A stretch of DNA of 64,000 nt, taken from positions 124,001 to 188,000 of the IMG/VR virus record IMGVR_UViG_3300032236_001859; one strand, 5' to 3'. Every line of letters begins with the position of its first letter. The stretch's first letter is position 1. A program made the translations under genes and the position numbers. Below are positions 10,181-42,526 of the stretch, piece after piece. Below the pieces are notes generated by a model, which was not told the origin of the DNA, made no database searches, and saw only the letters and a program-made list of their open reading frames with translations.

Positions 10181-10182
10181 GA

Positions 10183-11184
10183 TCAGTGCCCTGTAGCCAT
10201 GTTGACGACGCCGTTGGCCGCAGTACCCGCACCCCACCCAATTCCTGCGTGGATGAGCGCATTGCCAATCCCCTTACTAGGAAGTGTGCTGCGCGCCTTG
10301 CCCAGGTTCTCTGCGTAATTGCGGAGGTTAATCGCCTTGGCGTGCTCCAGTGGCAGATTCGTCACGGGGTCCAGCCCATAACCTTTACCGAGCTGCTGTT
10401 GCAGACGCCCCGAGATCTCCAGTGCCCTGGTGTGTTCCGGGGTCAAGATCTTCTGGTTATGCCCACTGTTAAACATCAGAGTTCTGGCTTCATCTGCTTT
10501 ATCTTGAACAACCCCTGCATTACGCTCGAAGTTGGATTGCTCACCCTTTGCCTTGAACTGAAGTGGATCTTTTAGCCATGACCACGCCGTTGGACTGGTT
10601 ATTGGCTTAGCATTACCGCCACCCTTGAGGACGTCGCCCTCAGAGCTCAACTCGGCGAGAACATTCTTGGGATTCACGGCGGCATCACGTACATGGAGCT
10701 GGACGGCCTTGGAGGCCTCCTCGGGGGTCATCCCGGGAACCCCAGTGTTTCCAAGATTCCTGGCAAGGGTGTCGGCGTGAGCGCCACCCTTGGTGATCTC
10801 GTCGACAACCCCACTCGTGGACTGTTGCCGGTAGGCGTCGCCAAACGGTAGATTCTTGCGGGTTACCGGGGCCAACGCGGCGGCACCGGCACCGAGACCA
10901 GTTAGAGTCCCAGGAGCCATCCCGGTGTACTTGTCAGTGAACTTGTCGACGGGCCCCCTGTTATCACCACCAATGCGTGATCCCAGGTAATCCCCGATTT
11001 CCTTGCGGTACAGATATGCGGCGCCGAGACCAGCGGCAAGGGTGCCACTGGCAAGGGCCAGTGACAACCATTCCTTGGCACCCCAGCCCTTGTCGTCTTC
11101 CTCGTCCTCGGCGTCATCGGAGACCGGGTACACGGCTTCAGCGGCCTGCTTAGCAAAGGCGTCGTGGTCGGCATGGGTTACCAT
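10183..11184 (-). CDS. K-x-A-motif protein with predicted membrane helices (putative internal/ejection protein)
   Basis: FAKQAAEA near the N-terminus, then WLSLALASGTLAAGLGAAYLY; C-terminal glycine-zipper ALIHAGIGWGAGTAA. Confidence 0.6.
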   Translation of the reverse strand: MVTHADHDAFAKQAAEAVYPVSDDAEDEEDDKGWGAKEWLSLALASGTLAAGLGAAYLYRKEIGDYLGSRIGGDNRGPVDKFTDKYTGMAPGTLTGLGAGAAALAPVTRKNLPFGDAYRQQSTSGVVDEITKGGAHADTLARNLGNTGVPGMTPEEASKAVQLHVRDAAVNPKNVLAELSSEGDVLKGGGNAKPITSPTAWSWLKDPLQFKAKGEQSNFERNAGVVQDKADEARTLMFNSGHNQKILTPEHTRALEISGRLQQQLGKGYGLDPVTNLPLEHAKAINLRNYAENLGKARSTLPSKGIGNALIHAGIGWGAGTAANGVVNMATGH

Positions 11185-11187
11185 GTT

Positions 11188-12687
11188 TCAGCCCTTCGCG
11201 TGGTGTTTCTGGAGTCGCATCATAACATCGGTGTCGAGGTCGCCACCACTGGCGAGCTGATCCTTGACCAGACGTCGAATCATCGAGGAGTCCGCATCAG
11301 GGTTCGTTGCCATAACAGCGTTAAAGGCTTTTACAGTTTCAGGAATCGGGCGCTGAGAAATATAGGGGTCATCCATCAGGGATGCCAGGGAGACCGCTGC
11401 ACCCGTGTTCTTGACGCGTTGCTGCCCACCGGAGCTCAAAGGCGATTTTGCGGAGACCCCGTAGTCATGTGAGGAGCCGCCATCACGGTTGCCCAGGGCA
11501 CCCCCGACGACGTCTTCAATCTTCTCACCACCCATGGCATCCTCGGGAAGCGAGGTCGCGGTGTCCGACAAATTCTTGACGTAGCCACCTGCATCCTCAG
11601 CGATCTTTGCGATCCGGGGGCCGGCTTCGGCGAGTCTGCGGTCGACTTCATTCTTGGCGGCGAGACAATGCGAGGCGTGCTTCCACAAAGTCTCCAGCGT
11701 CGAGACTGAGTCCACAAGCTCTTTCTCACGTGGGCTGCATGTCGCGATGACATCACTGGCGATCTTCATCGCGGGGGTCGCCCTGTGGTGCCCACGCTTC
11801 TCGAGGCTTCCGGTTACCCAGATGACATCGAGAGTGGCGGGGTCGACTCCAGCGCGCTTCGCCAGGGTCTCCACACGGGAGAACGCCGGGGAATCCACGC
11901 GGGAGAAGGATTCCACGATTCGAGCAAGTTTGACAAAGGCGGCATCACGGTGTTCGGAGAACTTGGTTCTCGCGGTCTCCGCGGCCACCTTCAAGTTCTG
12001 GAGTTTGATAAAAGGGTTGTCGGCGAGGCGTGAGCAATCGATGCCGTGGAGCCTGGAGTCCAGGGCTTCACGGATCCGCGAGGCTTCCATGCCGAAATCA
12101 GCGTTGACCCGGAATCCATCGATATCACAGGCCACCTTGAGGCGACCACGTTGCATGGCCATGGGGTCCACACCAAAGGCTTCACGAGCCGTCTTGATGA
12201 GTTCGGCATCCTCGGCTTCGGCGTCGGCATCACTGACTGCATCTTTGAAGTCGTCTTCTTCCTCATAGGAGGCATCGACGTCTTCGGGATCCGCTTTGCC
12301 TTCGGATTCCGCAGCAGTTTTCTTGGCACCCGGCAACTTGTTCGGGGATTCGACATCAGGGTAATCCCCTGGCTTCGTCCCATTCGCCGGCTTCTTGTTC
12401 TCGGCGTCGGGTTCCGGGAAGAGTTCCTGGGTGACCTCATCAGCGTTGGTCAGCGGAAAGGGATCCGCTTTGGCCTCGGCTTCCGAGTTCGCGAGATGGC
12501 TCAGGGTTCTTGAGTTGTTGACGGCATGGCTGACCAAGGCGACCTCTTTTGCATTGAGGTCGAACTCTTGAGCAACTTTGCGGAGCGCTGCGTTGGGAGC
12601 TGCACCATCATTCATGCCGTCGACACAGGCCTCAGCGGCCTTGATTAAGGTGGCGTGACGCCGGGGTCCCATGAGTTCAAGGCTCAT
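11188..12687 (-). CDS. K-x-A-rich helical virion protein
   Basis: 499 aa; IKAAE, RKVAQ, KKTAA, IKTAR, LKVAC, LKVAA, MKIAS, AKIAE. Confidence 0.6.
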   Translation of the reverse strand: MSLELMGPRRHATLIKAAEACVDGMNDGAAPNAALRKVAQEFDLNAKEVALVSHAVNNSRTLSHLANSEAEAKADPFPLTNADEVTQELFPEPDAENKKPANGTKPGDYPDVESPNKLPGAKKTAAESEGKADPEDVDASYEEEDDFKDAVSDADAEAEDAELIKTAREAFGVDPMAMQRGRLKVACDIDGFRVNADFGMEASRIREALDSRLHGIDCSRLADNPFIKLQNLKVAAETARTKFSEHRDAAFVKLARIVESFSRVDSPAFSRVETLAKRAGVDPATLDVIWVTGSLEKRGHHRATPAMKIASDVIATCSPREKELVDSVSTLETLWKHASHCLAAKNEVDRRLAEAGPRIAKIAEDAGGYVKNLSDTATSLPEDAMGGEKIEDVVGGALGNRDGGSSHDYGVSAKSPLSSGGQQRVKNTGAAVSLASLMDDPYISQRPIPETVKAFNAVMATNPDADSSMIRRLVKDQLASGGDLDTDVMMRLQKHHAKG

Positions 12688-13854: not shown

Positions 13855-16107
13855 TTAGCCGTCCATGGTGGAGTTGATGCCGAGACCGTAGAACTCGGGG
13901 TCCCCGGAGAGCGTGCGCTTGCGGAGGAAGATGATGAGATCACCGAGGCCCTCGAACGAGGACTTCAGGTTGTCACCGAGTTCAACGCTGTCTTCCTTGC
14001 CGAACTTTTCCTGGAACTCGTCGTAGTGCCAGTGCATCAAGAACAAGATGCGACCGAGGCGATCCATACCAGCAACAATGGTGGGCAGGAAGCGTTCGAT
14101 CATTTCGACAGGGGCATGAGTCTTGGTCAGGCTACCGAGGACAGCGGAATCGAAGACTTCTTTTTGACCCGTCTTCGCGGCTTGGTCGATGGCCTGGAAG
14201 GGGTCACCGCCACCTTCGTTCTCGGCGTCGCCGTGACCAAAGGGGGAGAAGTATTGGTATTGCTGGCGGTTGTCGGGGGTCTGGGAGGTCCGCGCCTGGG
14301 TTTCCCAGGGCACCTTGGTGGTATGGAAGCTGGACATCACTCCACCTTCGGAGGTGTCATTGATGTCCGGGAACGCCATCATGTTCTCAGACGCCGCTTG
14401 CTTCACCAACCAGTTCTGCGGGGCACGGAGGGCGTGGCGAAGCATGCTGCGGGTGTCGGATTCCGAGCACCCATGTTTCTTCATGAGATAACTGATCGCA
14501 GCTGTCTTCCCGAAGTAGTGGCTACCAAAATCATCCTTGATGTTGATGCCGGTTTCATCAGTCCAGACTTTAACAGCACTGGCCTGCTTCTTGAGGACTT
14601 CGATGATGGTGTTGTGGTCACCGAAGTCAGAGGCCTCGAGATGTTTCTCGAGACGGGTCTTCTCCCGGTTCTCCCAATCCAACTTGGCGTCGTCTTCACG
14701 GTTACCGTAGACCACAGCGGTGTAATACTTCGAGTTCACGTACAGCGTCGAGTTCGTTTTCTTGAGATCACGGTTTCCGGCTTCGGAGACAATGACCTGA
14801 TCGCAGTCGTGTTCACCAATGTAACCCAAGGGGCGGTTGATGGCGAAGACTCCACGATCCTTGTGGGCAAAACGCTCGGGGATCGAGCGGAGATCCCAGG
14901 TGGAACCCCCGTGGGTCTTATAGGTCGTGATGCCGTCATCACTGACCGCGGTGAAGACATCCAGGGGAGCCGAGGTCTTCACACCATCTTTGGCGACGAA
15001 GATGACTTGATCACCGGGGCGCACCTTGTTGGCGGCAACGCTGACCTTCTCGAGTTCCTTGGCAAAATCGGTTTCAGTGTACTGCCGCAGTGTTGAGATC
15101 GCACCAACTGCGGTGATACAAGTTTTCTCATCAGAGCACCGGATCACGAAAACCCTGCCGTTATCCGATGACATCGGGATCACAAGTGTGGGTTCCACGG
15201 AACCATTGGCGTAGAGGACATCGTAGAGTCCACCACCAGTAGGCGACGTCAGCTGCTGCTTGGTCTGGGTCGAGTACACAATGGACTTCGACATCTCAGG
15301 ACGCTTGTCGACAACTGCGACGTCACCTTCGAGGATCTGCTTGCGTTGGGCATCAGTGAGTTCATCGACGCCTTCTTGATCAATGGTCGAAATCACAGTG
15401 ATGGGCTCACCCTTTTGTTCCGCGGCGAGTTTAACAACACCGGGGACCCCGAAGGCGAGATCGGGGTAGAACTTACGAACCGCATTGGCGAGTTTAACAT
15501 GCCCTGCGGTCTTCGGGTTCACAATGGTATCCATGAACATCGAGGCGACATCGTGGCCCAGGGCTTCGATACCACTGGGGAGATCCACGGCACCCGCGAT
15601 CTTGCGGATATGTGTGATCTTGTGGATGGGAACCACAGGGCAGTCACCGGCGGCCTTGCGGGCCGCGGCACGCTTGGACAAACTGCTGCCGCCACCATCG
15701 CCATCATAAATACCAGCGGGCAATGTGCGGAGACGGTTGTAATCTGGGGTGCGTACACCACGTTGGACCCGGTTGCGTTTATCGGCTTCACCGAGAACAG
15801 TGGGGCGGCGATTGATGATGGAATTAACCCAGTCTTCACTCAAGGGCACGAAGAGATCTGAGTTCACGGAATAAATGGAGTCGAGTCCCTTGATCTCCCC
15901 GTTGAGGAAGAACACGGGGCTGTAATGCCAGTCGCCACCGATCTCAAAAGCGAACATGCCAACTGCACGACCGCCATCTTCATCGGCATCAATGAGTTGA
16001 AACCCGACGAGATAGTCGAGGAGAACCGGTGACTTATCACGGAGTCTGGCGTTGGCGAGGTCAGAGAACGTCTGCTCCAGCGCGGACTCAGAGGTATCTT
16101 GCGGCAT
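13855..16107 (-). CDS. Large head-region protein with clustered K-x-A sites
   Basis: 750 aa; AGGAG SD; SKRAAARKAAG, RKIAG, VKLAN, VKLAA, KKQAS, GKTAA, VKQAAS. Confidence 0.7.
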   Translation of the reverse strand: MPQDTSESALEQTFSDLANARLRDKSPVLLDYLVGFQLIDADEDGGRAVGMFAFEIGGDWHYSPVFFLNGEIKGLDSIYSVNSDLFVPLSEDWVNSIINRRPTVLGEADKRNRVQRGVRTPDYNRLRTLPAGIYDGDGGGSSLSKRAAARKAAGDCPVVPIHKITHIRKIAGAVDLPSGIEALGHDVASMFMDTIVNPKTAGHVKLANAVRKFYPDLAFGVPGVVKLAAEQKGEPITVISTIDQEGVDELTDAQRKQILEGDVAVVDKRPEMSKSIVYSTQTKQQLTSPTGGGLYDVLYANGSVEPTLVIPMSSDNGRVFVIRCSDEKTCITAVGAISTLRQYTETDFAKELEKVSVAANKVRPGDQVIFVAKDGVKTSAPLDVFTAVSDDGITTYKTHGGSTWDLRSIPERFAHKDRGVFAINRPLGYIGEHDCDQVIVSEAGNRDLKKTNSTLYVNSKYYTAVVYGNREDDAKLDWENREKTRLEKHLEASDFGDHNTIIEVLKKQASAVKVWTDETGINIKDDFGSHYFGKTAAISYLMKKHGCSESDTRSMLRHALRAPQNWLVKQAASENMMAFPDINDTSEGGVMSSFHTTKVPWETQARTSQTPDNRQQYQYFSPFGHGDAENEGGGDPFQAIDQAAKTGQKEVFDSAVLGSLTKTHAPVEMIERFLPTIVAGMDRLGRILFLMHWHYDEFQEKFGKEDSVELGDNLKSSFEGLGDLIIFLRKRTLSGDPEFYGLGINSTMDG

Positions 16108-31800: not shown

Positions 31801-34498
31801 CCGTGGAGATCAGGGAATCAAATGGATTCCCCTCCCCCTTTTCCAAACTGTCGACATCGATGACACCTGCTTTGAAAGGTTCGGCTTTCTCCTTCATGAT
31901 GTTAAACGCGCGATCACCAATTGTACTCGCCAACATCAATCTGAGGTCCGGTGGTAATCCGGCGAATATCGGGTTGTCTTTAACGGTACCATTCGCGAAC
32001 TCGATTGCGCCCTGCATGAGCTTGGCGTCGACCAGCATCTCGGCACCTTTTTTGTAACCGGCACCAACTGCGTTCAGCTTGCTTTCATCGCCACCTTGGT
32101 TGATGTATGCCGCCTTGCCCTGCCGAACCGCGAAGGCCTGGAGGGGGCTCAGGGTGGTCCCCCAGAACCCCATACCTTTGCCACCATTAGCGAACGTGTT
32201 CTGGGCGACCTCGGCGATCTTGGAGTCATCGTATGACGAGGACCCCGAAAGCATGCCGTAGCCCCATCTCCCGATATCCATCGTAGACGAGACGCCCTCC
32301 ATGATGATCGCACCGGCTGCGGTGTTCACGCTCAGAGCACGAACCCCCTTGAGGACTGAACCCAGTTTAACAGCTGCGGAGGCCCCTGTGGCCGCAGGCG
32401 CCCCGCCTGGGGTTGACGTGAGCACCCTGGCAGTGGACTTCATGCGATCGAGAACACTACCATATGCCTTGGATGCCGCTGCACCGGGATCTGCTACTGT
32501 TTTGGCAACACTGCTGCCGGCACGGGCTAGGGCACCACCAGCGGCCTTTGTGGCCTCAACGGGGTGGGCTACCGAGCTATAGATTTTACTGACTACCTTC
32601 AGTGGACTCGCCCCAGGTGGGGTCTGGGCCTGGACAGCGTTCTGTGTCGCCTTGTCGAGCCCCCGCCACCAGAGTTGCTGGGCACCAAAGTGCGCGGAGG
32701 TATCAATGGTCTGCTCCCCGATCTGGAGAGCCGAGCTCTTTATCCAATCAGCAACCGGGATGTCTTTGTTTGTGGGGTTGTTCCACCTGTTATAGCAGGC
32801 ACCGCCGACGCCGGCCAAAGTGGCCATGATGGGGAGCCCGGCGATGCTGCCATGCCGGGACATCAGCGCTGATGCCATGAGTCCCGTGTTCTGCGCCGTG
32901 TTTCCGAAGTTGTTGTGGTCCCTGAGTTCCCGGTAGAGGTCCGACCCCGGTTGGATCTTCTGATCCAGAATGGAGTTCACCCTGGCCTGGGCGGCATCCA
33001 CGGGTAACCCACGGACTTCTTGGAGTGCGTCTTGGATCTCTCGAAAATGGTTGTGATAGTTGATTACATTGGGATCACTCCCCACGATCTTCGCACCCTT
33101 TTTGTCGATGCGATTCGTGTTGAGATCCTGCGGCATAAAAGGAGCCGCCGCAGGAGTGCATGACCCAAGTTTCGGTAAGAACAATTCAACGGGGACGTCA
33201 AGCCAGTTCGATAGCGACGACGCGGTTTCCGCAGCAGGACGCGTCCCCGTGCTCACCATGTCGTAGTGGTCACGGACCCTTCGCAGGATATGATCGGCTT
33301 CGAGTCCCGCACGGATCCCGGATTCATTCTTAACACGGGTGAAAACGGATCTCGCGGCATCAACTGCTCGCTCCAGGAACTCTGGGCTCTTCTCGCTCCA
33401 TTGCTTGATCTCAGCGGGGTTCTCAGGGATCCCCATCTTCAGGAACTCTGTGGCCATGGCATGCGCGGGATTCAAGGGATCCCCAGCAGCAGCCTTCATA
33501 CCCGTGACGACATCCGCGATGAATCCAGCGCGAAGACTGGAACCGAGCTCACGGGATTCCGGGGAGTCCGGGTTCTCGACAAACGCGGCTAAGGCGGCCT
33601 CAGGGTTGATACCCTTCTTCGCGGTATCGACTCGATACGCCTTCAGGGCCTCGGCGAGATTGGAGGGCTTCCCGGTCCTCTCGGATTCCAGGATCGCAGC
33701 ATTCGCTGAGGTCAGGAGATCGGGTTTGCCATCCTCTGAGTTCAAGAGAACAGGGAGTCCAGTTTTCTTGTGGGCGTGGTAGCCCACGGCGAGATCGATG
33801 ATGTCATGGGAAGCCTTATCCGCGGAGGCCTTGTTCCAGAGATCCCCGGTGGCCCCGGTTTCGGCCTGCCATGATCTAATGATTTTATCCGTGGGGGCCC
33901 CTGCTGCCCTCCCATTTGCCCAGGCCTGTGCGGCGAAATAACGCTTGGCCATCCAGTCCTTGGCAGCGGCATCCGGGTTGGGTCCATCCAGTTTTGGGGG
34001 TGGTGCCCATCGGGAATCAAACTTGAAGTCGCCATCTTTGGCTTCGGCATCAGACGACAGCATGTCCACGTATTGATCTCGGACCCCTGGAGACAACGTC
34101 TTCGGGATCGAGGTGAGCTCAGGGGCCATCGTGGCGGCGCCAGCGTTGACCTGTTTGGTGAGCTCCTTCGAGGGAGTCTTTCCACCCGCAATGGTATCAA
34201 CGAGATCGCTGACCCCAGGGATTCGCATGGCACCAATTGAGGTCAGGGCTTCGCGGGCCTTATCGGGGTAGTTCTTGATCCAGAGATACCCCGCGGCACC
34301 GAGACCACCGATGGCTGCCAACCAGATCCAGGAGTCAGACTTCTCGTCATCCTCGTCGTCATCAGGGGCCCGTGAATGCGCGGCGAGTTTGCGTGTCTTC
34401 CCATGCCCAAAGAAATTGGGGGTGTTGTTGCGGAGTTCCTCAATGGGAAAATGAGCACGTCTGGCTTTGACGTGCTTGATTTCCTTCTTGGGCTTCAT
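28823..34498 (-). CDS. Very large (1891 aa) putative internal virion/ejection protein
   Basis: Coupled to the portal stop (ATGA). RKLAAH followed by a membrane helix WIWLAAIGGLGAAGYLW; CKLAAA precedes a Pro-rich linker and two C-terminal hydrophobic helices. Confidence 0.6.
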   Translation of the reverse strand: MKPKKEIKHVKARRAHFPIEELRNNTPNFFGHGKTRKLAAHSRAPDDDEDDEKSDSWIWLAAIGGLGAAGYLWIKNYPDKAREALTSIGAMRIPGVSDLVDTIAGGKTPSKELTKQVNAGAATMAPELTSIPKTLSPGVRDQYVDMLSSDAEAKDGDFKFDSRWAPPPKLDGPNPDAAAKDWMAKRYFAAQAWANGRAAGAPTDKIIRSWQAETGATGDLWNKASADKASHDIIDLAVGYHAHKKTGLPVLLNSEDGKPDLLTSANAAILESERTGKPSNLAEALKAYRVDTAKKGINPEAALAAFVENPDSPESRELGSSLRAGFIADVVTGMKAAAGDPLNPAHAMATEFLKMGIPENPAEIKQWSEKSPEFLERAVDAARSVFTRVKNESGIRAGLEADHILRRVRDHYDMVSTGTRPAAETASSLSNWLDVPVELFLPKLGSCTPAAAPFMPQDLNTNRIDKKGAKIVGSDPNVINYHNHFREIQDALQEVRGLPVDAAQARVNSILDQKIQPGSDLYRELRDHNNFGNTAQNTGLMASALMSRHGSIAGLPIMATLAGVGGACYNRWNNPTNKDIPVADWIKSSALQIGEQTIDTSAHFGAQQLWWRGLDKATQNAVQAQTPPGASPLKVVSKIYSSVAHPVEATKAAGGALARAGSSVAKTVADPGAAASKAYGSVLDRMKSTARVLTSTPGGAPAATGASAAVKLGSVLKGVRALSVNTAAGAIIMEGVSSTMDIGRWGYGMLSGSSSYDDSKIAEVAQNTFANGGKGMGFWGTTLSPLQAFAVRQGKAAYINQGGDESKLNAVGAGYKKGAEMLVDAKLMQGAIEFANGTVKDNPIFAGLPPDLRLMLASTIGDRAFNIMKEKAEPFKAGVIDVDSLEKGEGNPFDSLISTVIGTSKPKGNAPPGVDVATWDRQNKSAGQLKGLFNVLGDRDLRDIARTSVAATHERVGTTVRDALDTSPLYQHLPSEYKDQLSQRAQDYWKSQTDSIVNSMESAKSHEELKSALSQVSTTLAPATQQINEFSTGMGFGEKPRFDISQNSPHAIHKGVQGILGTLLRPQDTQELGSPEITKMVTETTGLSPEQIMAKARVKTTDYTDVMKPKMLQRGEIRKQEIIDDLKKNGLGDLLIEYRGSDRASEKYSWGGKTYGGPGDPTNSRYGFDSTGNDSLKNQRIVLEDRREAAKAAAYQRLNVDPKDPNAELIFNTKVSRLPENAAKEILAPLTRANASLYTLNQDVRSQGGHHLGGGPGMIERFKDNTFVNPAQTQKLLQELGEKYGFDKVEPPTAQGRYYVDTKGNAHDLAGDQEPPQGFKAQEYGFDSSKWDPRADNTPAWTFNKTTGRVTQVSPEAIRRGYQVESPLTNPGLYLSGISRYQTAHPEHWAAKSPDTYKNMEAYWRQHQAKAGAPANPFEPTPDYIIGDNGLPTRFIGEGDAARPVTREDVVSHIQGNPAKYRGLFPETFRGNVAPMVAPGDPSQQSYHPEYWLAQAGGDRAKAMQAYEAHQKNLTKGATPAKTPEVPLPKEPANVKPTEIQPVKPLAKTMPPASGQNKIGADAIWSRGCKLAAAAMGEALTEGAKPAVTGVMNWANNLIGNPDQPPAPAPAQKTPGIGDMAKTYTNSIKTPPQTPPQTPPPGPESNTGTPALTQQEKADAVAKSNAAKQRTQTAQTTEPAKTTPNNPDAVKKEEPSVWDQAKAKAQEGMDWAQKYNLDLAAIPVGLGLMLMGGKAGAIMGALVLGGGAYGAYQRYQSLNNAGGEIPPPKDPNLLAEIQKDPKKMDDYRAKVVSQRLGAMRAASSNEGKWQQWMQAPDNAKFFGNLKMAHDYLPSFVKSRVQAADPAFKDLNDNQFEMMISGMTGGRIGKPEPNWGDSIGLAKNLASSKMGM

Positions 34499-36375
34499 TG
34501 TGGGGCTCCGCCGCCACCGGGTGGCTGGCCTCCCTGACCACCTTGGAGAATCATCTGCTGGCCCTGTGATGACGCCTGCTGACGGACTTCATCCAGTTTG
34601 GCCTTGACGAGGCCGTGGAGATCTTTGTTGCCCTCGCGAAGAGCCTTGAGTTGTTGTTTGCGGTCGTACTCGGGCATCCCGGCGAGTTGCCCCGCGATCT
34701 GCTCGGCTTGGGCAGCCATGCCTCCAAGCGTGCTGGCATTGGCACCGCCGCCTGCGGGGATCCCACCCATTGGAGCACCGCCCATTGGGGTTCCCGGTGG
34801 AGGTGGTGCACCGGCACCGCCGCCTTGCTGCTGGGCGGCCTGCTGTTGTTGCAGCATCCCCGACGGGCTCTGGGCTCCGGCGAGGGCGCTGACAGCACCC
34901 ATCTCCTGATCCTTGGCTGCCTTGTCGTCCTGCTCTTTCTGGAGTTCCTGGATGAACTCTTGGTGCTTGAAGACCTTTCGGGCTTCATCACCGGCGAGGA
35001 CCCCAAGGGGTTCCAGGGCAGTCTGGGGACTGATCTGATTAGCAGCCATGAGCTGCATGAGGATATTCTTGCGTTCCTGGTCATCCGCGATGGTACTGCG
35101 TTGGATGCGGACATCGGTTTCCTCGAGACCAAAGTTACGTGCCGCAACTTTAACGATCCATTGTAGGATCGAGGTGTACATCGCGGGTACCGCTGACCAC
35201 GCGGATTCAAATAGCCGCAGGGCCATCGGAGCCGCCTGGGCAGTCAGAGTCATCTGGTGGTACTCAAGCGGAACATTGCACTGATTCAGGGATTCCTGTT
35301 GACGAAACTTTAACTTATCCGCGGGGAGGAGATCCTTGCCTTCACCACCCAGGAACTGGTAGTTCACGGGGTATGGGGCGGTGTGATACGACATGGGTTC
35401 GGCACGATGGGCATTGATGATGCGATTCATGCCGCCAACAAAGTTATCCATGCCATGTTGGATCATGGGGTCGTTCTGGTTCGCCATCGCCGGCGAAATC
35501 AAACGGAGACCCAAGGTGTAATCGGAAGCAATGGCTTGGTCGGCACGGTTCAGGATCTGCTGCAACCAGAATGTCCGGAAGTTGGAGATCGAGGCGGGTA
35601 CACCCCAGCCGCGAGTCCGCATCCCTGAGATCACGGGTTCGTCGACGTGATAGATCATGTCTTCGTCGAAGAGGAGACGCCCATTGACGGCAACGGCTTC
35701 GAGGACCTCGATGGGGGTGTCATCAATGAAGATGCGCGCCTTCGACATGATGTCTTGACGGAAATCGTTGGGGATCCGCCACCAGATATTCTTACGTTGC
35801 GACCAAAAGTTCTGGGCGATCTCGATCTCAAAGGGGGAGTAGCGGAGGACACGGATCCGAGAGATATCGGGGTCCTTGCGATCCCGGAGCACGAAGTCCT
35901 GAGTGTTCCCACACTGGGGGCATGGCTTCTTGCGAAGCCAGCGGACCCCTCGCTGAGAAGTCAAATCAATGGTGTAGTCGACATGCTTGATGGGCTGCTC
36001 GAAGTAACAATGCGGGCAGGACAGATTCCGTTTGAATGGTAAGTAGATCGATAGGAATACGTTGCCGTAGCACAGGAAGTCGGACCCCGCGGCTTTGAGT
36101 TCTCTCTGATAATTGAGGTGCTTCTGGAAGAGATCCTTGAACTCGGACTCCTCGTTCTCGGATAGCGCCGGGAATTGAACACTGGTGATGAAGTGGGCGA
36201 TCACACGTCCAAAAGCGGAACGATAGTTGCCATCGGTGAGCCAGAGGTACTGGGCCCACCACATGATGAGCTCATGGTTGGTGGGCATCACCGTGGAGGC
36301 ATAGTCGAGCCAGGGGACATGGAGCTGACGAACGGCTTGGCCGCGATCCCCACCATTGACATTGAGATTTGCCAT
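34495..36375 (-). CDS. Probable portal protein with Zn-ribbon insertion and Q/G/P-rich tail
   Basis: 626 aa at the upstream end of the head cluster. Alpha/beta pattern (WWAQYLWLTDGNYRSAFGRVIAHF...RWGVP-like RGWGVP...LRLISP) resembles portals; contains CPHC...CPQC. Confidence 0.6.
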   Translation of the reverse strand: MANLNVNGGDRGQAVRQLHVPWLDYASTVMPTNHELIMWWAQYLWLTDGNYRSAFGRVIAHFITSVQFPALSENEESEFKDLFQKHLNYQRELKAAGSDFLCYGNVFLSIYLPFKRNLSCPHCYFEQPIKHVDYTIDLTSQRGVRWLRKKPCPQCGNTQDFVLRDRKDPDISRIRVLRYSPFEIEIAQNFWSQRKNIWWRIPNDFRQDIMSKARIFIDDTPIEVLEAVAVNGRLLFDEDMIYHVDEPVISGMRTRGWGVPASISNFRTFWLQQILNRADQAIASDYTLGLRLISPAMANQNDPMIQHGMDNFVGGMNRIINAHRAEPMSYHTAPYPVNYQFLGGEGKDLLPADKLKFRQQESLNQCNVPLEYHQMTLTAQAAPMALRLFESAWSAVPAMYTSILQWIVKVAARNFGLEETDVRIQRSTIADDQERKNILMQLMAANQISPQTALEPLGVLAGDEARKVFKHQEFIQELQKEQDDKAAKDQEMGAVSALAGAQSPSGMLQQQQAAQQQGGGAGAPPPPGTPMGGAPMGGIPAGGGANASTLGGMAAQAEQIAGQLAGMPEYDRKQQLKALREGNKDLHGLVKAKLDEVRQQASSQGQQMILQGGQGGQPPGGGGAPQ

Positions 36376-38428: not shown

Positions 38429-39720
38429 GCCGGCTGGAGTTCGGGATGAGAGTGATCTGCAGGGGCATATCGTATGCGTGGCCCTGCACTGCGTGGTGCG
38501 CGTGGAGCCCGCGTAGGCGCTGGTGCTTCGTCTTCGTCAGACATCGACTTGTACAACAAATAGCCAAGCCCGAGTACGGCGGCACCCCCCGCGCTGTACT
38601 TCAGAATCTTCACGGCCTCTGGGGATGTGACGAAATCAGTTACCTTCTTGAAGGATTTGGAAATATCGTCGACCGACTTCGCAGTGTCTTTTACGCCGGA
38701 ACCCAAGTTGGTTACCGCGTCGGATGCCTTGTCAGCAGAGCTGGTAACTTTAGACACTGAACTATCGATATTCTTCAAAGTGGACCCAGCGTCCTGAGTC
38801 AAACTCTGGACACCTCCGAGGGCACCAGTCAATGCCTTCATCGCCGGAGTGGTTTCATTGGCAGCATTAGCCACAGCACCCGCGCCCTGTTCAACTGACT
38901 TCGCAGCACCAGCAGCGGATTGCCCGACCTCGTCCACATTCTTACGAAGAGACTTGACCCCCTCGGAGACATCCTGGCCGACCTGCTTAACTGTGCCAGT
39001 AGACGTATTGACTACATCCCGAACACCTTGATCAACTGCCGAAAGTAGACCTGGCTTTCCATCTTTGTCTTGTAGTTTCTCTTTTGTTGTCCCTGCGATG
39101 TCGTTCGCCTTGCCTAGTAAACCGGCACCATAACTTGCAGCCTCTACGCCTGCGGCAGCAGCACCTAACCCTAGTTTTTGCTTGACGACATCATTTATCC
39201 ACGTGTCCTGGCGGGCACGTGATGCCAGAGGCGACAAGACTGCGTGGGCAAGCTCTGGGTCTGCAGAGGAAACAGTTTCAACCCTATTAGTGGTGGGGGA
39301 GTGAAAACTGAACTCATGTGCACCTGTCTGTGGGTTTAACTTCCACAGTGGAGATCTTGATAAATCCATTTTGCCCTCAGCGGCATCTCGGAGATGCCGT
39401 TGCGCCAACCCAAAATCCTTACCACTCATCCCATGGCGAGTTGACTTGGTAGCCAGGGATCCCCCAAGGATCCCTGCTATTCCGGCTTCACTCCCGGCCC
39501 CGATTGGATCCTGCCCCGCAGCAGTAGCGCCTGCGTAGGTTGCACCGGCTACAGGTAACCCCACTAACAGCGGCGCCGGGGTCCTCCCCACCAATGCACG
39601 TGCACCGGTAAGTGCAGGTGATACCCCTGATGACAGCGCATCCATTGCTCCGATGAGCCCCCTGCGATCTGCGGCTACCTTTTTAGTCAGATAAAAAAGC
39701 ATGATCTGAGCTGGACTCAT
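38425..39720 (-). CDS. K-x-A protein with membrane helices and amphipathic helical repeats
   Basis: TKKVAAD at the N-terminus; glycine zippers; long SV/GV helical repeat region; C-terminal SAGGAAVLGLGYLLY. Confidence 0.65.
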   Translation of the reverse strand: MSPAQIMLFYLTKKVAADRRGLIGAMDALSSGVSPALTGARALVGRTPAPLLVGLPVAGATYAGATAAGQDPIGAGSEAGIAGILGGSLATKSTRHGMSGKDFGLAQRHLRDAAEGKMDLSRSPLWKLNPQTGAHEFSFHSPTTNRVETVSSADPELAHAVLSPLASRARQDTWINDVVKQKLGLGAAAAGVEAASYGAGLLGKANDIAGTTKEKLQDKDGKPGLLSAVDQGVRDVVNTSTGTVKQVGQDVSEGVKSLRKNVDEVGQSAAGAAKSVEQGAGAVANAANETTPAMKALTGALGGVQSLTQDAGSTLKNIDSSVSKVTSSADKASDAVTNLGSGVKDTAKSVDDISKSFKKVTDFVTSPEAVKILKYSAGGAAVLGLGYLLYKSMSDEDEAPAPTRAPRAPRSAGPRIRYAPADHSHPELQPA

Positions 39721-41804
39721 GACTGGGACTCCTGTGGAGGCATCGGTGCAGTCTGTGCGACTTCTTCTGGGTTCTGGATCTCCGGGGTCTCAGGCTTCGC
39801 CGCCTTCGACTTCCGGATCGCACGATGGATCACACGTGCCCTGGCACGATCAAGATTACGGAATGGCTTATTGATGGCTAGACCCATGGATCCGTAGACC
39901 TGTTTGAGGACTTGGTCATGGGGGAGCCACTCACCGGGGAAATCCGCGGGTGCCTCGCCTTCACCGAGATGAAAGGCGTAGTCGTAGCCGTGGTACCCAG
40001 GCTCCGCGACACCCTCATCAGGAAGAACGCGGACGTTGGATGAGTAAGGTGCAGGGGCCCCCTTACCCTCGGTGGGGAAATGAAACCGACGGTTGCTGTC
40101 ACGTCGGACCAATACTTTACCTTCGGGATCCAAATAGACGTACTCGGTCTTAGGAAGCAGCGCGGCAGCATCTGCCTGCTTCTTCAATGGCATCTCGGTG
40201 TGCGTGGCCAGTACGTCATCTCCGACCCCGCCTGTGAAAAACTCGGTCTCATCAAAGTAGGTGACCCCTGCGGCTTCAGCGGCACCCTCGTCATCGGGGG
40301 AGTTACCAACCATGCAGATCACGGGATCCAGAGAGAACGCTTCTTCGGCGTATTCGATCATCGCTGGAGACGGCTTCCGGCCGGCGTCGTCTTCATCGGT
40401 ACAGAACACGATGTCGTCGATCTCGGGGAGGAGCTCAAGGGTTTCATCATTGAAGTCGAGGACATCGGGGAGCGTGTTCGTCCCCATGACACTGCGGTTG
40501 GTTACCCCAACGATGCGGACCCCTGCAGCCTTAAACTTCTTGAGGAGTTCTTTGACCCCTGGTTTGATCTTCTGGGTGGCCTCGAGGCCGGCGTCGTCAT
40601 CCCATTCGGCGACAACGGTACCATCGAGGTCAACGAGGAGTCCTGGTGCCGACTCAGGCGTCTTGTCCTGGAACTTATGGGTTCTCATGGACCCCGAGAT
40701 CTCCGCGGCATGCTTCTCGGCGAGATTGTTGGTGTGCTTGGCCATCGTGAAGTCCCCGTTGGTTGGGGAATCCCCGCTGCGGAGGACAACCAGAACTCTG
40801 CCATCCGGGAATCTCCGGACTTCATCGAAGTAGTGGCCATGGGCGGCCTCGAGATCCTGGAGCGCCTTCACGAAGACCTTGGGGTCCTTGGGGGCATAGA
40901 TGCGACGAAGACTGTTACGGTACAGTGCCCAGCCGTGATGCTGCCGGGGCACACTGGCGAGTTTCTTACCCTTGAGCTCGGGATCCTTCTTCGCCATGTC
41001 CCTGGCGGCCTCGACGAGTTCGAGGCGGACCTCGTTGGCTCTCTTGGCCCAGTCGTTCTTAGCAATGAGTTCTTTGAGCCTGGTAATCAGCGTAGCAAAG
41101 GGGATCACATCGAAATCCTCCCGATCCGGGTGTGTGGTCCCCAGTTTGCCGTCATGGACCCCAGTGAAGAAATATGTGCGTTCGCCATCGAATGCGGAGT
41201 CATCCCAGAAGTCGTTGACCCCACTTGGCCAAATCGATTCTACGATCTCACGAGTCTCCGGAGAAATGATCTTGAGATCGGCTTCCTCGATGGCTTCCCG
41301 GATCGCGGCGAGTAACGGGGGTTCGCCGTCATCGATGCCGCCACCGGGGAACAGGATGTAGTCGCCCTTGTCGATGCCGACGACGCCATCCTTATCGAAG
41401 GCGATGAGTTCGGATCTCGGTCGCAGGAGTTGCGATGGGGAACCCTCGTGCTTATCGGGAGTGGGTTCGTTCTCAGCGGCTTTCTTGCCGAGACCCCTGG
41501 CGAAGCTGTGATCCCTGCGTTGTTTCGCCAAGGCGGCCTCATCAGGTTCGACATCCTTGGGTTTCGCCGGCAGCATCTTCTTCGCGTTGGTCCACACCTT
41601 CTCCGCAGGAGATGGGAGGTCGTGGTCCTCTGAGGTCCCCCTGCAGTCGCCACCACTGAACAGTTCAAGAAAGGTTTTGCCCTCGACCATGTGGGCATTG
41701 GTTGCCTTGACAGGATTCCCACCCGTTGGCGTCGCCACAGGTGTGTTGGTCACGGGGCGATCACTACCCCGCCCCGGAGATGGAATCTTGGTCTCCGCTC
41801 GCAT
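39717..41804 (-). CDS. Multidomain enzyme: NUDIX hydrolase + pterin-carbinolamine-dehydratase-like + HAD phosphatase + degenerate NUDIX-like domain
   Basis: Nudix box FPGGGIDDGEPPLLAAIREAIEEADL. PCD-like segment GWALYRNSLRRIY...LEAAHGHYFD...VLVVLRSG..PTNGDFTMAKHTNNL. HAD motifs LLVDLDGT, VTNRS, RKPSPAMI, MVGNSPDDEGAAEAAGV. Confidence 0.8.
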   Translation of the reverse strand: MRAETKIPSPGRGSDRPVTNTPVATPTGGNPVKATNAHMVEGKTFLELFSGGDCRGTSEDHDLPSPAEKVWTNAKKMLPAKPKDVEPDEAALAKQRRDHSFARGLGKKAAENEPTPDKHEGSPSQLLRPRSELIAFDKDGVVGIDKGDYILFPGGGIDDGEPPLLAAIREAIEEADLKIISPETREIVESIWPSGVNDFWDDSAFDGERTYFFTGVHDGKLGTTHPDREDFDVIPFATLITRLKELIAKNDWAKRANEVRLELVEAARDMAKKDPELKGKKLASVPRQHHGWALYRNSLRRIYAPKDPKVFVKALQDLEAAHGHYFDEVRRFPDGRVLVVLRSGDSPTNGDFTMAKHTNNLAEKHAAEISGSMRTHKFQDKTPESAPGLLVDLDGTVVAEWDDDAGLEATQKIKPGVKELLKKFKAAGVRIVGVTNRSVMGTNTLPDVLDFNDETLELLPEIDDIVFCTDEDDAGRKPSPAMIEYAEEAFSLDPVICMVGNSPDDEGAAEAAGVTYFDETEFFTGGVGDDVLATHTEMPLKKQADAAALLPKTEYVYLDPEGKVLVRRDSNRRFHFPTEGKGAPAPYSSNVRVLPDEGVAEPGYHGYDYAFHLGEGEAPADFPGEWLPHDQVLKQVYGSMGLAINKPFRNLDRARARVIHRAIRKSKAAKPETPEIQNPEEVAQTAPMPPQESQS

Positions 41805-42526
41805 CAGATACCTCCGAGATACCGGATCGCATAGGCTCCGAGTCTGCGGAGTTCAACTGCTGTCTTGGGAAGATTGGGGCCCATGCCATAGCTGGCACCA
41901 GTGGACTGGGTTGGCGGGCTACCGGGCTGACCACTGGCCGTGGATGTCATGGGCTGCGCCTGGGCGACACCCCCGGTGCCCGTGCCGGGGTTGGATCCCG
42001 GGATGCCACCGACTTGACCACCAGGTGGGATAATGGTCTTTGAGCGATGCTGGGGGTCCACGGCGAGATCACCAGGGCCCTGGTTCTGTTGAACCCCTAT
42101 GGCACCCGGTGCGGGTCGTGCGCTCACATTGGGAGTCGACGAGGCCCGGTTGGGGGGTTGTGGGACACCGCCAGCAACCGCCTTCTTCTCCAACTTCTCA
42201 GATTCCGTGTAATACCTGGGATTCTTGGCGAGATGATCGATCGAGAGTTCTTTCCGGGCCTCAAGATTGGGAGTGTGTTCACCCTCTTCCTTGATCCCCT
42301 TGGCGAGTTCCTTGACACTCAGCTTGCCATGCGGGGGTGTCGTGCCCCCAAGGATGGCAGCTGCATGCTTGCCGATGCCGAGCTCCCAGGACTCCTTCTT
42401 CCAGTTCTTGTGGTCACGCTTCTGCTTCGCGGCGGTTGCGTAAAACACGCGTTCGGCCTTTTCCTTACTGCCGTAGGTGTCTTCCATGGAGTTCAGAACT
42501 TTCTTGGCATCACCGACAATAGGCAT
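41804..42526 (-). CDS. DUF5661-like domain protein with K-x-A sites
   Basis: ELAKGIKEEGEHT....ARKELSIDHLAKNPRYYT matches my recollection of the DUF5661 consensus; flanked by GKHAA and EKKAV. Confidence 0.65.
   Translation of the reverse strand: MPIVGDAKKVLNSMEDTYGSKEKAERVFYATAAKQKRDHKNWKKESWELGIGKHAAAILGGTTPPHGKLSVKELAKGIKEEGEHTPNLEARKELSIDHLAKNPRYYTESEKLEKKAVAGGVPQPPNRASSTPNVSARPAPGAIGVQQNQGPGDLAVDPQHRSKTIIPPGGQVGGIPGSNPGTGTGGVAQAQPMTSTASGQPGSPPTQSTGASYGMGPNLPKTAVELRRLGAYAIRYLGGI

What the first reader, a model, noticed from the sequence alone, without database searches (positions are those of the whole stretch)
39717..41804. Enzyme polyprotein NUDIX | PCD-like+HAD | NUDIX-like with K-x-A sites exactly at the domain junctions
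Seen: KKAA (41475-41486) precedes the NUDIX domain, KKLAS (40953-40967) separates NUDIX from the PCD-like/HAD block, and KKQAD (40170-40184) separates HAD from a last degenerate NUDIX-like domain. The PCD-like His motif is altered (HGHYFD versus HHPD). Established: NUDIX enzymes hydrolyse ADP-ribose, NAD-caps, Ap4A or (p)ppGpp-type molecules; DxDGT HADs (GmhB/PNKP-like) remove phosphates, including RNA 3'-phosphates. Inference: a packaged, protease-released nucleotide-sanitising toolkit injected with the genome, which could neutralise nucleotide-signal immunity or repair RNA ends before phage genes are expressed. I know of no described equivalent. With the protease and RNAP, this is the best candidate for a novel system here.
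Basis: partly seen in the sequence, partly recalled or inferred. Interest (0 to 1): 0.8.

Follow-up and report, generated by a model that had tools for sequence, protein, structure and literature searches.

The report
Phage multi-enzyme polyprotein with cleavage linkers
An uncultured 216-kb soil/freshwater phage encodes, next to its portal gene, one protein made of four folded enzyme-type domains, and the conserved Lys-x-Ala motif in each linker is the same motif that is over-represented in the phage's head-assembly proteins, so the protein is probably cut into separate enzymes by the head protease, though nothing has been shown at the bench.

Summary
ORF 39717-41804(-) is a 695-aa protein with five parts:
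- an N-terminal conserved peptide;
- an intact NUDIX domain, whose nearest structure is E. coli RppH;
- a PCD/DCoH-like fold that lacks the catalytic His set;
- an intact HAD-IIIA phosphatase;
- a NUDIX fold without a Nudix box.

K and A are invariant or nearly so across homologues down to 33% identity, while x varies. K-x-A-D precedes the last domain in 63 of 65 family clusters.

In an unbiased scan of all 400 X.Y motifs, K.A ranks first in the proteins around the head-maturation protease gene (46 observed, 19 expected). Other window proteins show no excess. The same enrichment surrounds the protease homologue of the distant cultured phage Arash.

Relatives at the same locus shuffle modules between K-x-A sites. 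These include LigD 3'-phosphoesterase plus ligase, extra NUDIX, DUF5661 and C39 peptidase.

Cleavage, packaging and substrates remain inferred. The concept is not unprecedented: polyvalent proteins, predicted virion-packaged Nudix, T4 and SPN3US head proteins. I rate it a new variant of a known kind.

The parts
39717..41804 (-). Whole 695-aa ORF (stop codon included). Its start overlaps the stop of the upstream 240-aa ORF by 1 nt, and its stop overlaps the start of the downstream 431-aa ORF by 4 nt (ATGA).
41478..41804 (-). Residues 1-109: N-terminal module predicted to be disordered. It carries the family-wide motif TGGNPxK[AS][ST]NA...ERFSxG. This is a candidate propeptide or targeting segment (inference). 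In larger relatives the same motif lies internally, always upstream of the NUDIX domain.
41475..41486 (-). Junction 1: K107-K-A-A110, in the linker 100-118 (pLDDT below 50). A K-x-A lies 5-25 residues before the NUDIX start (anchor motif RxR[SAG]E) in 21 of the 22 family members with that anchor. In the 22nd (P0018) the script's anchor fell outside the NUDIX domain.
40956..41477 (-). Residues 110-283: NUDIX hydrolase domain with an intact Nudix box (G155, E161, R169, E170, E173, E174). Its nearest solved structure is E. coli RppH.
40956..40964 (-). Junction 2: K281-L-A283, in the linker 279-294. K281 and A283 are invariant in 15 homologues.
40707..40955 (-). Residues 284-366: domain with a PCD/DCoH-like fold. 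Only one His of the catalytic set is kept (G-H323).
40707..40715 (-). It reads K-[HT]-A in all homologues that have the PCD-like domain.
40173..40706 (-). Residues 367-544: HAD-IIIA phosphatase with all four motifs present (D392xD394GT396; T435-N; K477; G500...D505).
40173..40181 (-). Junction 4: K542-Q-A544, followed by invariant D545, in the linker 538-545. K-x-A occupies this place in 63 of 65 family clusters, 58 of them as K-x-A-D. In the 24 members mapped individually it lies 30 residues before the RRFxFP motif in 23 and 27 residues before it in one.
39720..40172 (-). Residues 545-695: NUDIX fold without a Nudix-box helix, followed by a basic C-terminal helix and tail. This is the hallmark module of the family.
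8780..10237 (-). Head-maturation protease candidate, the presumed enzyme acting on K-x-A. It has invariant H109, H122 and S173. Its own conserved sites, K242-V-A244 and K268-x-A270, lie just after the catalytic part.
7251..8777 (-). Acidic, Ala-rich, scaffold-like protein with 14 K.A sites (7.7 expected).
11188..12687 (-). Head-module protein with 13 K.A sites (4.8 expected). Weakly similar to Arash gp220, which is itself K.A-rich.
13855..16107 (-). 750-aa structural protein, homologous to the Arash virion protein gp218, with a cluster of six K.A sites at residues 145-226.
5154..6092 (-). Major capsid protein (26% identity to Arash gp226). Its N-terminal K25-A-A27 lies near Arash K27-E-A29.
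41804..42526 (-). Upstream 240-aa ORF. Its DUF5661 module is flanked by K53-H-A and K114-K-A. The same module is embedded between K-x-A sites in the polyprotein of relative L009.
34495..36375 (-). Portal protein, three genes downstream. The order polyprotein, then a 287-aa SpeE-like ORF, then portal is kept in nearly all relatives; L006 shows a different 247-aa ORF in that slot.

Best explanation
The gene encodes a precursor of several small proteins that belongs to the virion (head) module of a jumbo phage that also encodes a multisubunit RNA polymerase in that module.

Shown:
- Four folded domains are joined by disordered linkers.
- Each linker carries a conserved K-x-A.
- K-x-A is specifically over-represented in the proteins encoded around the head-maturation protease gene, both here and in a distant cultured relative.
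- The NUDIX and HAD domains keep all catalytic residues. The PCD-like and C-terminal NUDIX-like domains do not.

Inferred:
- During head maturation the prohead protease cuts at K-x-A, probably after the Ala.
- This would remove or separate an N-terminal targeting segment of about 12 kDa.
- It would release a 19-kDa NUDIX pyrophosphohydrolase, a 9.5-kDa PCD-like module, a 19-kDa HAD-IIIA phosphatase and a 17-kDa pseudo-NUDIX module.
- The pieces travel with the DNA into the cell and act before phage genes are expressed.

Most likely chemistry (inference from the families):
- removal of pyrophosphate or cap-like groups from 5' ends of RNA, or from dinucleotide or ADP-ribose-type nucleotides, by the NUDIX domain;
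- removal of a monophosphate, such as a 3'-phosphate or a sugar or nucleotide phosphate, by the HAD domain;
- ligand or partner binding by the two inactive folds.
For: Architecture and catalytic residues.

Pseudo-NUDIX identity: (pLDDT 89.6; only NUDIX folds returned; best match RppH, E = 3e-4).

Linker and motif coincidence.

Conservation. The x position varies (T, V, Q, K, E, L) while K and A are fixed. That pattern matches the known P3-x-P1 prohead-protease motifs, A-x-E in SPN3US (PMC10052503).

Motif is a property of the head module:
- Per-ORF shuffles give protease 10 observed vs 3.3 expected, 11188-12687 13 vs 4.8, 7251-8777 14 vs 7.7, 13855-16107 9 vs 3.5.
- K.A ranks first of 400 motifs in that set (z = 6.2). 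Other proteins show 54 observed vs 51 expected.
- In Arash, gp220, gp222, gp223 and gp225 are enriched, and control motifs are not.
- The capsid protein N-termini of both phages carry a K-x-A at residues 25-29.

Protease identity:
- PHROG head maturation protease hit.
- Homologues are annotated as prohead or capsid maturation protease in Rhodococcus phage E3, Gordonia phages and phage G.
- Invariant His, His and Ser, and a conserved K-V-A right after the catalytic part.

Structural context:
- Translational coupling and a position next to the portal.
- Arash packages its RNA polymerase in virions, by mass spectrometry (PMC10585845).

Module shuffling between K-x-A sites in relatives.
Against: - There is no proteomic, biochemical or structural evidence that any K-x-A is cut, or that the protein is in virions.
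- Arash, the only cultured relative, has no detectable homologue of this protein.
- In SPN3US the identified prohead-protease cuts remove N-terminal propeptides (the only other cut is the protease's own C-terminal propeptide); none separates folded enzyme domains. A true polyprotein would therefore depart from the best-studied precedent.
- Invariant D545 and the nearness of K-x-A-D to the first strand of the last domain could reflect a structural or functional role rather than a cleavage site.
- Family counts come from related sequences, so they overstate independence.
- The substrate cannot be read from sequence. The protein scores far below the RppH, GmhB and HisB family cutoffs.
Confidence: 0.55

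Rival explanations
1. The protein works as one intact multidomain enzyme, a polyvalent protein that is never cut. The K-x-A residues would be conserved for another reason, such as a hinge, helix cap or docking motif for a common partner like a scaffold or portal protein.
For: Polyvalent proteins with 2-15 domains are proposed to be delivered whole in some systems (PMC5512222). D545 is invariant next to the motif. No cleavage has been observed.
Against: The motif lies in segments with pLDDT below 50, not in folded parts. Its middle residue is free to vary. It is repeated 10-14 times in scaffold-like proteins and in the protease itself, which is the signature of prohead-protease substrates. Modules are exchanged as units bounded by K-x-A.
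Confidence: 0.15
2. The protein is a cytoplasmic, non-virion phage enzyme for nucleotide or cofactor metabolism or RNA turnover, made late in infection. It would be processed, if at all, outside the capsid, and it would not be injected.
For: T4 NudE and most phage NUDIX and HAD genes are not known virion components (general knowledge; PMC9503650). No homologue was found among Arash virion proteins. The SpeE-like gene next door looks metabolic.
Against: The gene is overlapped and translationally coupled inside the block running from tail fibre to portal. Its position next to the portal is conserved in all relatives. It shares the motif that marks head-module proteins. Some relatives fuse it to Gly-zipper or transmembrane-like segments and to DUF5661 modules.
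Confidence: 0.15
3. The protein is packaged and cut as proposed, but its role is the one the reader favoured: destroying nucleotide immune signals or NAD-derived molecules (Thoeris, CBASS or (p)ppGpp type), not acting on nucleic-acid ends.
For: Virion-packaged Nudix domains have been proposed to counter NAD-derived signals (PMC9503650). ADP-ribose pyrophosphatases appear among the structural matches.
Against: - The best structural matches of both NUDIX-fold domains are RppH bound to RNA.
- The HAD scores at or near the PNK 3'-phosphatase cutoff: 21.9 and 22.2 bits against 22, with five family members matching.
- One relative adds LigD 3'-phosphoesterase plus an ATP-dependent ligase in the same precursor.
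- None of this is decisive.
Confidence: 0.2
4. The cuts are made by a protease other than the head-maturation protease. Candidates are a host protease after injection, or a peptidase module carried in the precursor of some relatives.
For: Two family clusters carry Peptidase_C39 modules. L008 and P0013 carry a 'HELxE' module. Polyvalent proteins are proposed to self-process through a metallopeptidase.
Against: The window protein has no peptidase module. The motif enrichment centres on the head-protease gene and includes that protease's own C-terminal part.
Confidence: 0.08

Closest known systems
Phage polyvalent proteins (Iyer, Burroughs, Anand, de Souza, Aravind 2017; PMC5512222)
   Same: Several unrelated effector or enzyme domains sit in one polypeptide, encoded among late or virion genes. 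They are proposed to be injected with the DNA and processed into separate units. Domain shuffling between relatives is extensive.
   Different: - The described class relies on an in-built zincin-like metallopeptidase, and ADP-ribosyltransferases are its commonest enzymatic domains.
- Here there is no peptidase module, and the linkers carry the motif of the head protease.
- The domain set is different: NUDIX, PCD-like, HAD-IIIA, pseudo-NUDIX.
Head proteins processed by the prohead protease in T4 (Alt, internal proteins; L/I-x-E) and in phiKZ-like phages such as SPN3US (A-x-E; PMC10052503)
   Same: A three-residue motif with a free middle position is repeated in scaffold-like proteins and in the protease itself. 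The substrates are packaged with the DNA, together with a virion RNA polymerase.
   Different: - The motif here is basic-x-small (K-x-A), not x-x-Glu.
- The SPN3US substrates lose N-terminal propeptides, and the protease loses a C-terminal one.
- Here four sites lie between folded domains, which would make a true polyprotein of enzymes.
Virion-associated Nudix domains predicted in phages (Iyer et al. 2022; PMC9503650)
   Same: A NUDIX domain is encoded with, or fused to, head-morphogenesis proteins and is proposed to be injected.
   Different: - Those cases are fusions to MuF, portal or the capsid peptidase, or T4 NudE-like genes.
- This family is separate. It pairs an active NUDIX with a pseudo-NUDIX and uses K-x-A linkers.
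E. coli RppH (RNA pyrophosphohydrolase)
   Same: It is the best structural match of both NUDIX-fold domains (TM 0.65 and 0.5). The first domain has an intact Nudix box.
   Different: Sequence similarity is far below the family cutoff (17.5 bits against 118), so this is a resemblance in fold and not orthology. Substrate untested.
HAD-IIIA phosphatases (HisB-N, GmhB, polynucleotide kinase 3'-phosphatase)
   Same: Capless HAD with DxDGT, T-N, RKP and G-x4-D motifs. TIGR01662 scores above its cutoff. Structural matches are 2o2x and HisB-N.
   Different: It scores below the cutoffs of every named enzyme family. The PNK3P score is at the threshold (21.9 against 22).
Salmonella phage Arash (PMC10585845)
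   Same: It is the closest cultured relative of the phage backbone: portal, RNAP beta', protease, capsid protein and gp218 are homologous at 25-33% identity. It shows the same K-x-A enrichment around the protease gene, and its RNA polymerase is found in virions by mass spectrometry.
   Different: No homologue of the NUDIX-HAD precursor was detected.

Membership tests
NUDIX hydrolase superfamily (first domain, residues 110-283) | Nudix box GX5EX7REUXEEXGU with catalytic R-E...E-E | tested here: met
   G155-x5-E161-x7-R169-E170-A-I-E173-E174-A-D-L. R169, E170, E173 and E174 are invariant in 15 homologues. The only deviation is Gly to Asp at position 176.
NUDIX hydrolase superfamily (first domain, residues 110-283) | Profile score above the curated cutoff, and a NUDIX fold | tested here: met
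   PF00293 scores 34.4 bits against a cutoff of 21.1. Foldseek matches RppH with a target TM-score of 0.65, E = 2e-6.
RppH (RNA pyrophosphohydrolase) equivalog | Score above the NCBIfam PRK00714 cutoff | tested here: not met
   17.5 bits against a cutoff of 118. The resemblance is in fold only.
HAD-IIIA phosphatase | TIGR01662 above its cutoff, and HAD motifs I-IV | tested here: met
   47.1 bits against 44.6. D392, D394, T396, T435, N436, K477, G500 and D505 are invariant.
Polynucleotide kinase 3'-phosphatase (PF08645) | Score above the Pfam gathering cutoff | tested here: inconclusive
   21.9 bits against 22 for the window protein, and 22.2 for the 94%-identical P0001. Five of 71 family clusters match, best E = 7e-7.
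GmhB / HisB-N histidinol phosphatase | Score above the equivalog cutoff | tested here: not met
   GmhB PRK08942 36.6 against 178; GmhB_yaeD TIGR00213 19.7 against 149.6; hisB_Nterm 23 against 140; Histidinol-ppas 40.9 against 84.
Pterin-4a-carbinolamine dehydratase / DCoH | Profile match over the whole domain | tested here: inconclusive
   No Pfam hit on the window protein at E up to 1. The family profile matches PDB 3jst at E = 0.0076 over 78 of 98 positions, with further DCoH chains at E of 0.5-1. Pterin_4a scores 23.1 bits against a cutoff of 26 on P0004. Two of 71 clusters match.
Pterin-4a-carbinolamine dehydratase / DCoH | Catalytic His-His-Pro and the third His | tested here: not met
   The H-H-P position reads G-H323-x. 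The later T-H position reads R/K-[ST].
NUDIX superfamily (C-terminal domain, residues 545-695) | NUDIX fold | tested here: met
   The model has pLDDT 89.6. All 14 PDB matches with E below 0.001 are RppH, and lower ranks are mostly other NUDIX folds, including the MutY C-terminal domain. TM-score is about 0.5.
NUDIX superfamily (C-terminal domain, residues 545-695) | Nudix box helix with REx2EE | tested here: not met
   The model has no helix between strands 23-28 and 66-74. The alignment has no REx2EE. No Pfam NUDIX hit covers this region.
Phage polyvalent proteins | Two or more unrelated effector domains in one polypeptide in a virion or late-gene context | tested here: met
   Four folded domains. 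The gene lies between the tail-fibre-like and portal genes.
Phage polyvalent proteins | In-built metallopeptidase for self-processing | tested here: not met
   No peptidase family is found on the window protein.
Substrates of a prohead (head-maturation) protease | A short recognition motif shared with the scaffold, capsid protein and the protease itself | tested here: met
   K.A is the top motif of 400 in the head-module set, and the other window proteins show no excess. The same holds in Arash. The motif is conserved in the protease and the capsid protein.
Substrates of a prohead (head-maturation) protease | Observed cleavage and presence of the products in virions | not testable with these tools
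   The phage is uncultured and no proteome is at hand.

The most novel reading that the evidence does not exclude
A lineage of RNA-polymerase-encoding jumbo phages uses its capsid protease, with a previously undescribed Lys-x-Ala specificity, as a true polyprotein processor. The protease would cut a modular, rapidly shuffled precursor into individual active enzymes inside the head: an RppH-like NUDIX with a pseudo-NUDIX partner, a HAD 3'-phosphatase-like enzyme, and in relatives a 3'-phosphoesterase and a ligase. These would then be injected as an end-healing or decapping kit that acts on RNA or DNA ends at the very start of infection.
Probability: 0.3. Interest if true: 0.8.

Novelty: new variant of a known kind. 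Interest (0 to 1): 0.62.

Why it matters
If K-x-A is cut, three things follow.

- **A new protease specificity.** This would be a basic-x-small motif that can be read directly from sequence, unlike the x-x-Glu rule of T4 and phiKZ-like phages. It would allow head-protein processing to be predicted across a whole uncultured jumbo-phage lineage and in the cultured phage Arash.
- **A phage polyprotein of enzymes.** Processing by the capsid protease would produce several separate folded enzymes from one precursor. That strategy is familiar from animal RNA viruses and is little documented in tailed phages.
- **A defined enzyme kit.** The set of small, separable enzymes (NUDIX, HAD, and in relatives 3'-phosphoesterase and ligase) is presumably needed in the first minutes of infection. 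The question of what injected proteins do becomes testable with simple substrates.

If it is not cut, the protein is still a well-delimited new family: 77 clusters among 1.84 billion representatives, pairing an active and an inactive NUDIX fold.

Tried and rejected
- **Phage database searches.** tblastn and megablast of the gene and its 10-kb surroundings against 50,697 phage records found only one weak HAD match in a 595-kb uncultured phage. There is no annotated close relative.
- **Profile search in Arash.** Profiles of the whole family, the C-terminal domain and the PCD-like domain were searched against the Arash structural region. Nothing significant turned up.
- **Protease against PDB.** A sequence search of the protease against PDB sequences gave no meaningful match. 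Its identity rests on the PHROG hit and on annotated phage homologues.
- **C-terminal domain against PDB sequences.** The profile gave only a spurious cytochrome f match. The fold search was needed.
- **C-terminal domain against viral structures.** The fold search against BFVD found nothing at E of 0.001 or below.
- **ESM Atlas on the N-terminal 110 residues.** Best score was 0.60, to disordered N-termini of secreted effectors. That is below the level at which shuffled sequences score, so I discarded it.
- **N-terminal motif elsewhere in the window.** The TGGNP motif is not shared with other window ORFs, so there is no evidence for a common targeting peptide in these 64 kb.
- **Neighbour homology.** The 431-aa downstream ORF is not homologous to the Gly-rich N-terminal extension of P0011-type relatives.
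- **Distant protease loci.** A single-sequence query for distant protease loci in IMG/VR returned only near-identical contigs.
- **Literature on cleavage motifs.** Searches for a described K-x-A prohead-protease motif, or for phage G cleavage sites, found none. This is absence in the searched library only.

Full report
**What is there**

The ORF 39717-41804 on the minus strand is real and encodes 695 aa. Its start overlaps the stop of the upstream 240-aa ORF by one base, with a GGAGG eight bases upstream of the ATG. Its stop overlaps the start of the downstream 431-aa ORF by ATGA, and that ORF overlaps the next one in the same way. The gene is therefore one link in a translationally coupled chain.

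The window comes from a 216-kb IMG/VR contig, so this is a jumbo phage. Near-identical sequence occurs in soil, wetland, lake and freshwater-sediment metagenomes.

**Surroundings**

All of the following lie on the minus strand.
- A portal protein at 34495-36375. It is 27% identical to the portal of Salmonella phage Arash.
- A tail-fibre-like DUF2793 protein at 49073-52093.
- A fused RNA polymerase beta/beta' gene with an intein, and a beta' C-terminal gene.
- A head-maturation protease candidate at 8780-10237 (phrog_18299). Its tblastn matches are annotated as prohead or capsid maturation protease in Rhodococcus phage E3, Gordonia phages and Bacillus phage G gp19.
- The major capsid protein at 5154-6092.

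The nearest cultured phage is Arash, at only 25-33% protein identity for backbone genes. Mass spectrometry of Arash virions found the RNA polymerase subunits among the most abundant proteins (PMC10585845). The gene under study therefore sits in a virion module of a phage type that packages enzymes.

**Domain anatomy**

- **NUDIX and HAD by sequence.** Pfam gives NUDIX (151-239) and HAD (394-513) above their cutoffs. NCBIfam places the HAD in subfamily IIIA, also above cutoff.
- **Catalytic residues.** The Nudix box is intact, and R169, E170, E173 and E174 are invariant. HAD motifs I-IV are all invariant.
- **Structure model.** An AlphaFold2 model built on 15 homologues shows four confident folded blocks separated by stretches with pLDDT below 50 at 100-118, 279-294, 367-370 and 538-545. 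Residues 1-95 are also disordered.
- **Fold search of the full model.** Foldseek against the PDB matches the first block to E. coli RppH (target TM-score 0.65). It matches the HAD block to 2o2x and HisB-N.
- **PCD-like block (284-366).** The family profile matches a pterin-4a-carbinolamine dehydratase structure over nearly its whole length, at a weak E-value (0.0076). Pfam Pterin_4a appears just below cutoff on homologue P0004. Two of 71 family clusters match it at E of 0.001 or below. Only one of the catalytic histidines is kept. I call it a PCD-like fold that is not a dehydratase.
- **C-terminal block (545-695).** Modelled alone it reaches pLDDT 89.6. In the PDB it finds essentially only NUDIX folds, best RppH, and also the inactive MutY C-terminal domain. 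It has no Nudix-box helix and no REx2EE, so it is a pseudo-NUDIX.

**The junction motif**

The fourth linker, between the PCD-like and HAD blocks, is directly preceded by K364-H-A366.

Taken alone, nine K.A against 4.7 expected is weak (P = 0.026). Conservation makes the case.
- In the alignment of 15 homologues at 33-94% identity, K281, A283, K542, A544 and D545 are invariant although the residues around them are not.
- Across 24 family members the K-x-A sites keep fixed distances to domain anchors. The script placed a K-x-A about 110-117 residues after the Nudix box in 21 of the 22 members with a NUDIX domain. The exception, L009, was a mis-anchored pattern; by eye it has K-R-A at residue 1048 just past the domain. 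A K-x-A lies 5-25 residues before the NUDIX start in 21 of the 22 members with that anchor. One lies exactly 30 residues before the RRFxFP motif of the last domain in 23 of 24, and 27 residues before it in the other.
- A full HMMER scan of 1.84 billion cluster representatives with the C-terminal domain profile found a small, sharply bounded family of 77 clusters. Of the 65 with enough upstream sequence, 63 have K-x-A at that place and 58 have K-x-A-D. The two exceptions read K-x-G-D.
- The middle residue is T, V, Q, K, E or L.

A fixed first and third position with a free middle one is the form of the known prohead-protease motifs: L/I-x-E in T4 and A-x-E in SPN3US.

**Is K-x-A a property of the head module?**

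- **Per-ORF shuffles.** Clear excess appears in the protease itself (10 observed, 3.3 expected) and in three neighbours: 11188-12687 (13 vs 4.8), 7251-8777 (14 vs 7.7) and 13855-16107 (9 vs 3.5). The polymerase, portal, fibre-like, reductase and giant ORFs show none.
- **Unbiased motif scan.** To avoid picking the motif in advance, I scored all 400 X.Y pairs. K.A ranks first in the head-module set (46 vs 19.1, z = 6.2) and first in the polyprotein family. It sits at expectation in the other window proteins (54 vs 51.1).
- **Arash.** K.A is enriched in gp220, gp222 (the protease homologue), gp223 and gp225. K.S, K.G, R.A and E.A are not.
- **Capsid proteins.** Both carry a K-x-A at residues 25-29 of the N-terminus.
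- **The protease family.** In an alignment of 20 sequences, K242-V-A244 directly after the catalytic part is invariant. K268 is invariant and A270 nearly so. H109, H122 and S173 are also invariant. This fits removal of a C-terminal segment by self-cleavage, as described for SPN3US gp245.

I conclude that K-x-A is very probably the recognition motif of this lineage's head protease. That is an inference from pattern. No cut has been observed.

**Relatives and module shuffling**

The gene always lies just upstream of the portal. Nearly all relatives also have a 260-290-aa SpeE-like ORF between the two; L006 shows a different 247-aa ORF there. The content of the polyprotein gene changes from relative to relative.
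- L007: 512 aa, with the N-terminal motif, NUDIX and pseudo-NUDIX.
- L011: 1002 aa.
- L008: 1395 aa.
- L009: 1491 aa, with LigD 3'-phosphoesterase, ATP-dependent ligase, the N-terminal motif now internal, a Cys-rich module, NUDIX, DUF5661 and pseudo-NUDIX.
- P0004 and P0005: a second NUDIX.

Among 71 clusters, 55 have a Pfam NUDIX, 18 a HAD, 12 DUF5661, 5 PNK 3'-phosphatase, 2 Peptidase_C39 and 1 LigD-PE plus ligase. Many junctions between recognisable modules in these larger proteins carry a K-x-A.

The DUF5661 module is a separate gene in this window (the 240-aa ORF, flanked by K-H-A and K-K-A). In L009 it is embedded between K-x-A sites. The unit of evolution is therefore the module between two K-x-A sites, as expected if the modules function after being separated.

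**How it most likely works**

Shown: the architecture, the catalytic competence of two domains at the residue level, the conserved motif in each linker, and the specific association of the motif with head-assembly proteins.

Inferred:
- The precursor enters the prohead, perhaps through its conserved disordered N-terminal segment.
- The protease cuts at the four sites. If the cut follows the Ala, the fragments are about 11.7, 19.4, 9.5, 19.1 and 16.8 kDa.
- The pieces are ejected with the DNA.

On chemistry, the universal core is an active NUDIX plus a pseudo-NUDIX, and both are most like RppH in fold. The HAD is the capless IIIA type that includes polynucleotide 3'-phosphatases, and it scores at the PNK3P threshold. 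One relative adds a 3'-phosphoesterase and a ligase. I therefore rank action on nucleic-acid ends (5' pyrophosphate or cap removal, 3' dephosphorylation) above hydrolysis of immune signal nucleotides. The preference is mild, and no substrate can be assigned from sequence.

**Comparison with what is known**

The general idea is not new.
- Polyvalent proteins are multi-domain, virion-associated and thought to be processed into units after or before injection (PMC5512222).
- Nudix domains fused to head proteins have been proposed to be packaged (PMC9503650).
- T4 and the phiKZ-like phages cut many head proteins at a three-residue motif (PMC10052503).

Three things differ here.
- The motif is K-x-A.
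- The predicted cuts lie between folded enzyme domains, not only at an N-terminal propeptide.
- The precursor has no in-built peptidase.

The domain set and the NUDIX/pseudo-NUDIX pairing define a small family confined to this phage lineage. I found no paper describing this motif or this family in the searched library. That does not prove none exists.

**Verdict**

- Observation: confirmed.
- Interpretation: partly supported.
- Novelty: new variant of a known kind.
- Confidence in the processed, packaged precursor model: about 0.55.

The main weakness is the complete lack of protein-level evidence. The quickest test is to re-search the existing Arash virion spectra for peptides that start after K-x-A.

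Noticed in passing
window 21031-26958 (-) and 55227-58649 (-): The RNA polymerase beta/beta' fusion ORF (1975 aa) carries an intein with a LAGLIDADG domain. The ribonucleotide-reductase-like ORF (1140 aa) also carries a LAGLIDADG insert.
   Followed up: no
window 37565-38428 (-): A 287-aa ORF weakly similar to polyamine aminopropyltransferase (SpeE-like methyltransferase fold) is conserved between the polyprotein gene and the portal in nearly all relatives; L006 shows a different 247-aa ORF in that slot. It is translationally coupled to the upstream gene. Its role in a structural module is unexplained.
   Followed up: partly
window 28823-34498 (-) and 43669-49071 (-): Two giant ORFs (1891 and 1800 aa) in the structural region match no Pfam or PHROG family. 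Neither is enriched in K.A.
   Followed up: no
window 7251-8777, 11188-12687, 13855-16107, 6809-7480 (-): These scaffold-like or internal head proteins have 7-14 K-x-A sites each, mostly K-x-A-[SAGE]. The GTG start called for 6809-7480 overlaps the previous ORF and is probably too far upstream.
   Followed up: partly
L009:7412-11887 (+) and L010: The polyprotein of this relative contains a LigD 3'-phosphoesterase domain and an ATP-dependent DNA/RNA ligase domain ahead of the NUDIX module, plus a Cys-rich module that resembles HIPIP.
   Followed up: partly
L008:8735-12922 (+) and P0013: A module with a conserved 'HELxE' string follows a Gly-rich, membrane-like N-terminal extension. No Pfam family was found. 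Two other family clusters carry Peptidase_C39.
   Followed up: no
L004:15238-18093 and L009:13499-16369 (+): The portal ORFs of these relatives are 951-956 aa instead of about 620, with the extra sequence before residue 102 of the window portal. This may be an insert or an intein.
   Followed up: no
window 5154-6092 (-): The major capsid protein has K25-A-A27 near its N-terminus, close to K27-E-A29 in Arash gp226. This suggests removal of a short propeptide of about 27 residues.
   Followed up: partly
window 8780-10237 (-): The called GTG start of the protease ORF is probably about 25-35 codons too far upstream, because the homologues begin at 'MI.K' (residue 25 of the call). The family also has invariant C183, C186 and C197 and nearly invariant H199, which suggests a metal site.
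   Followed up: partly
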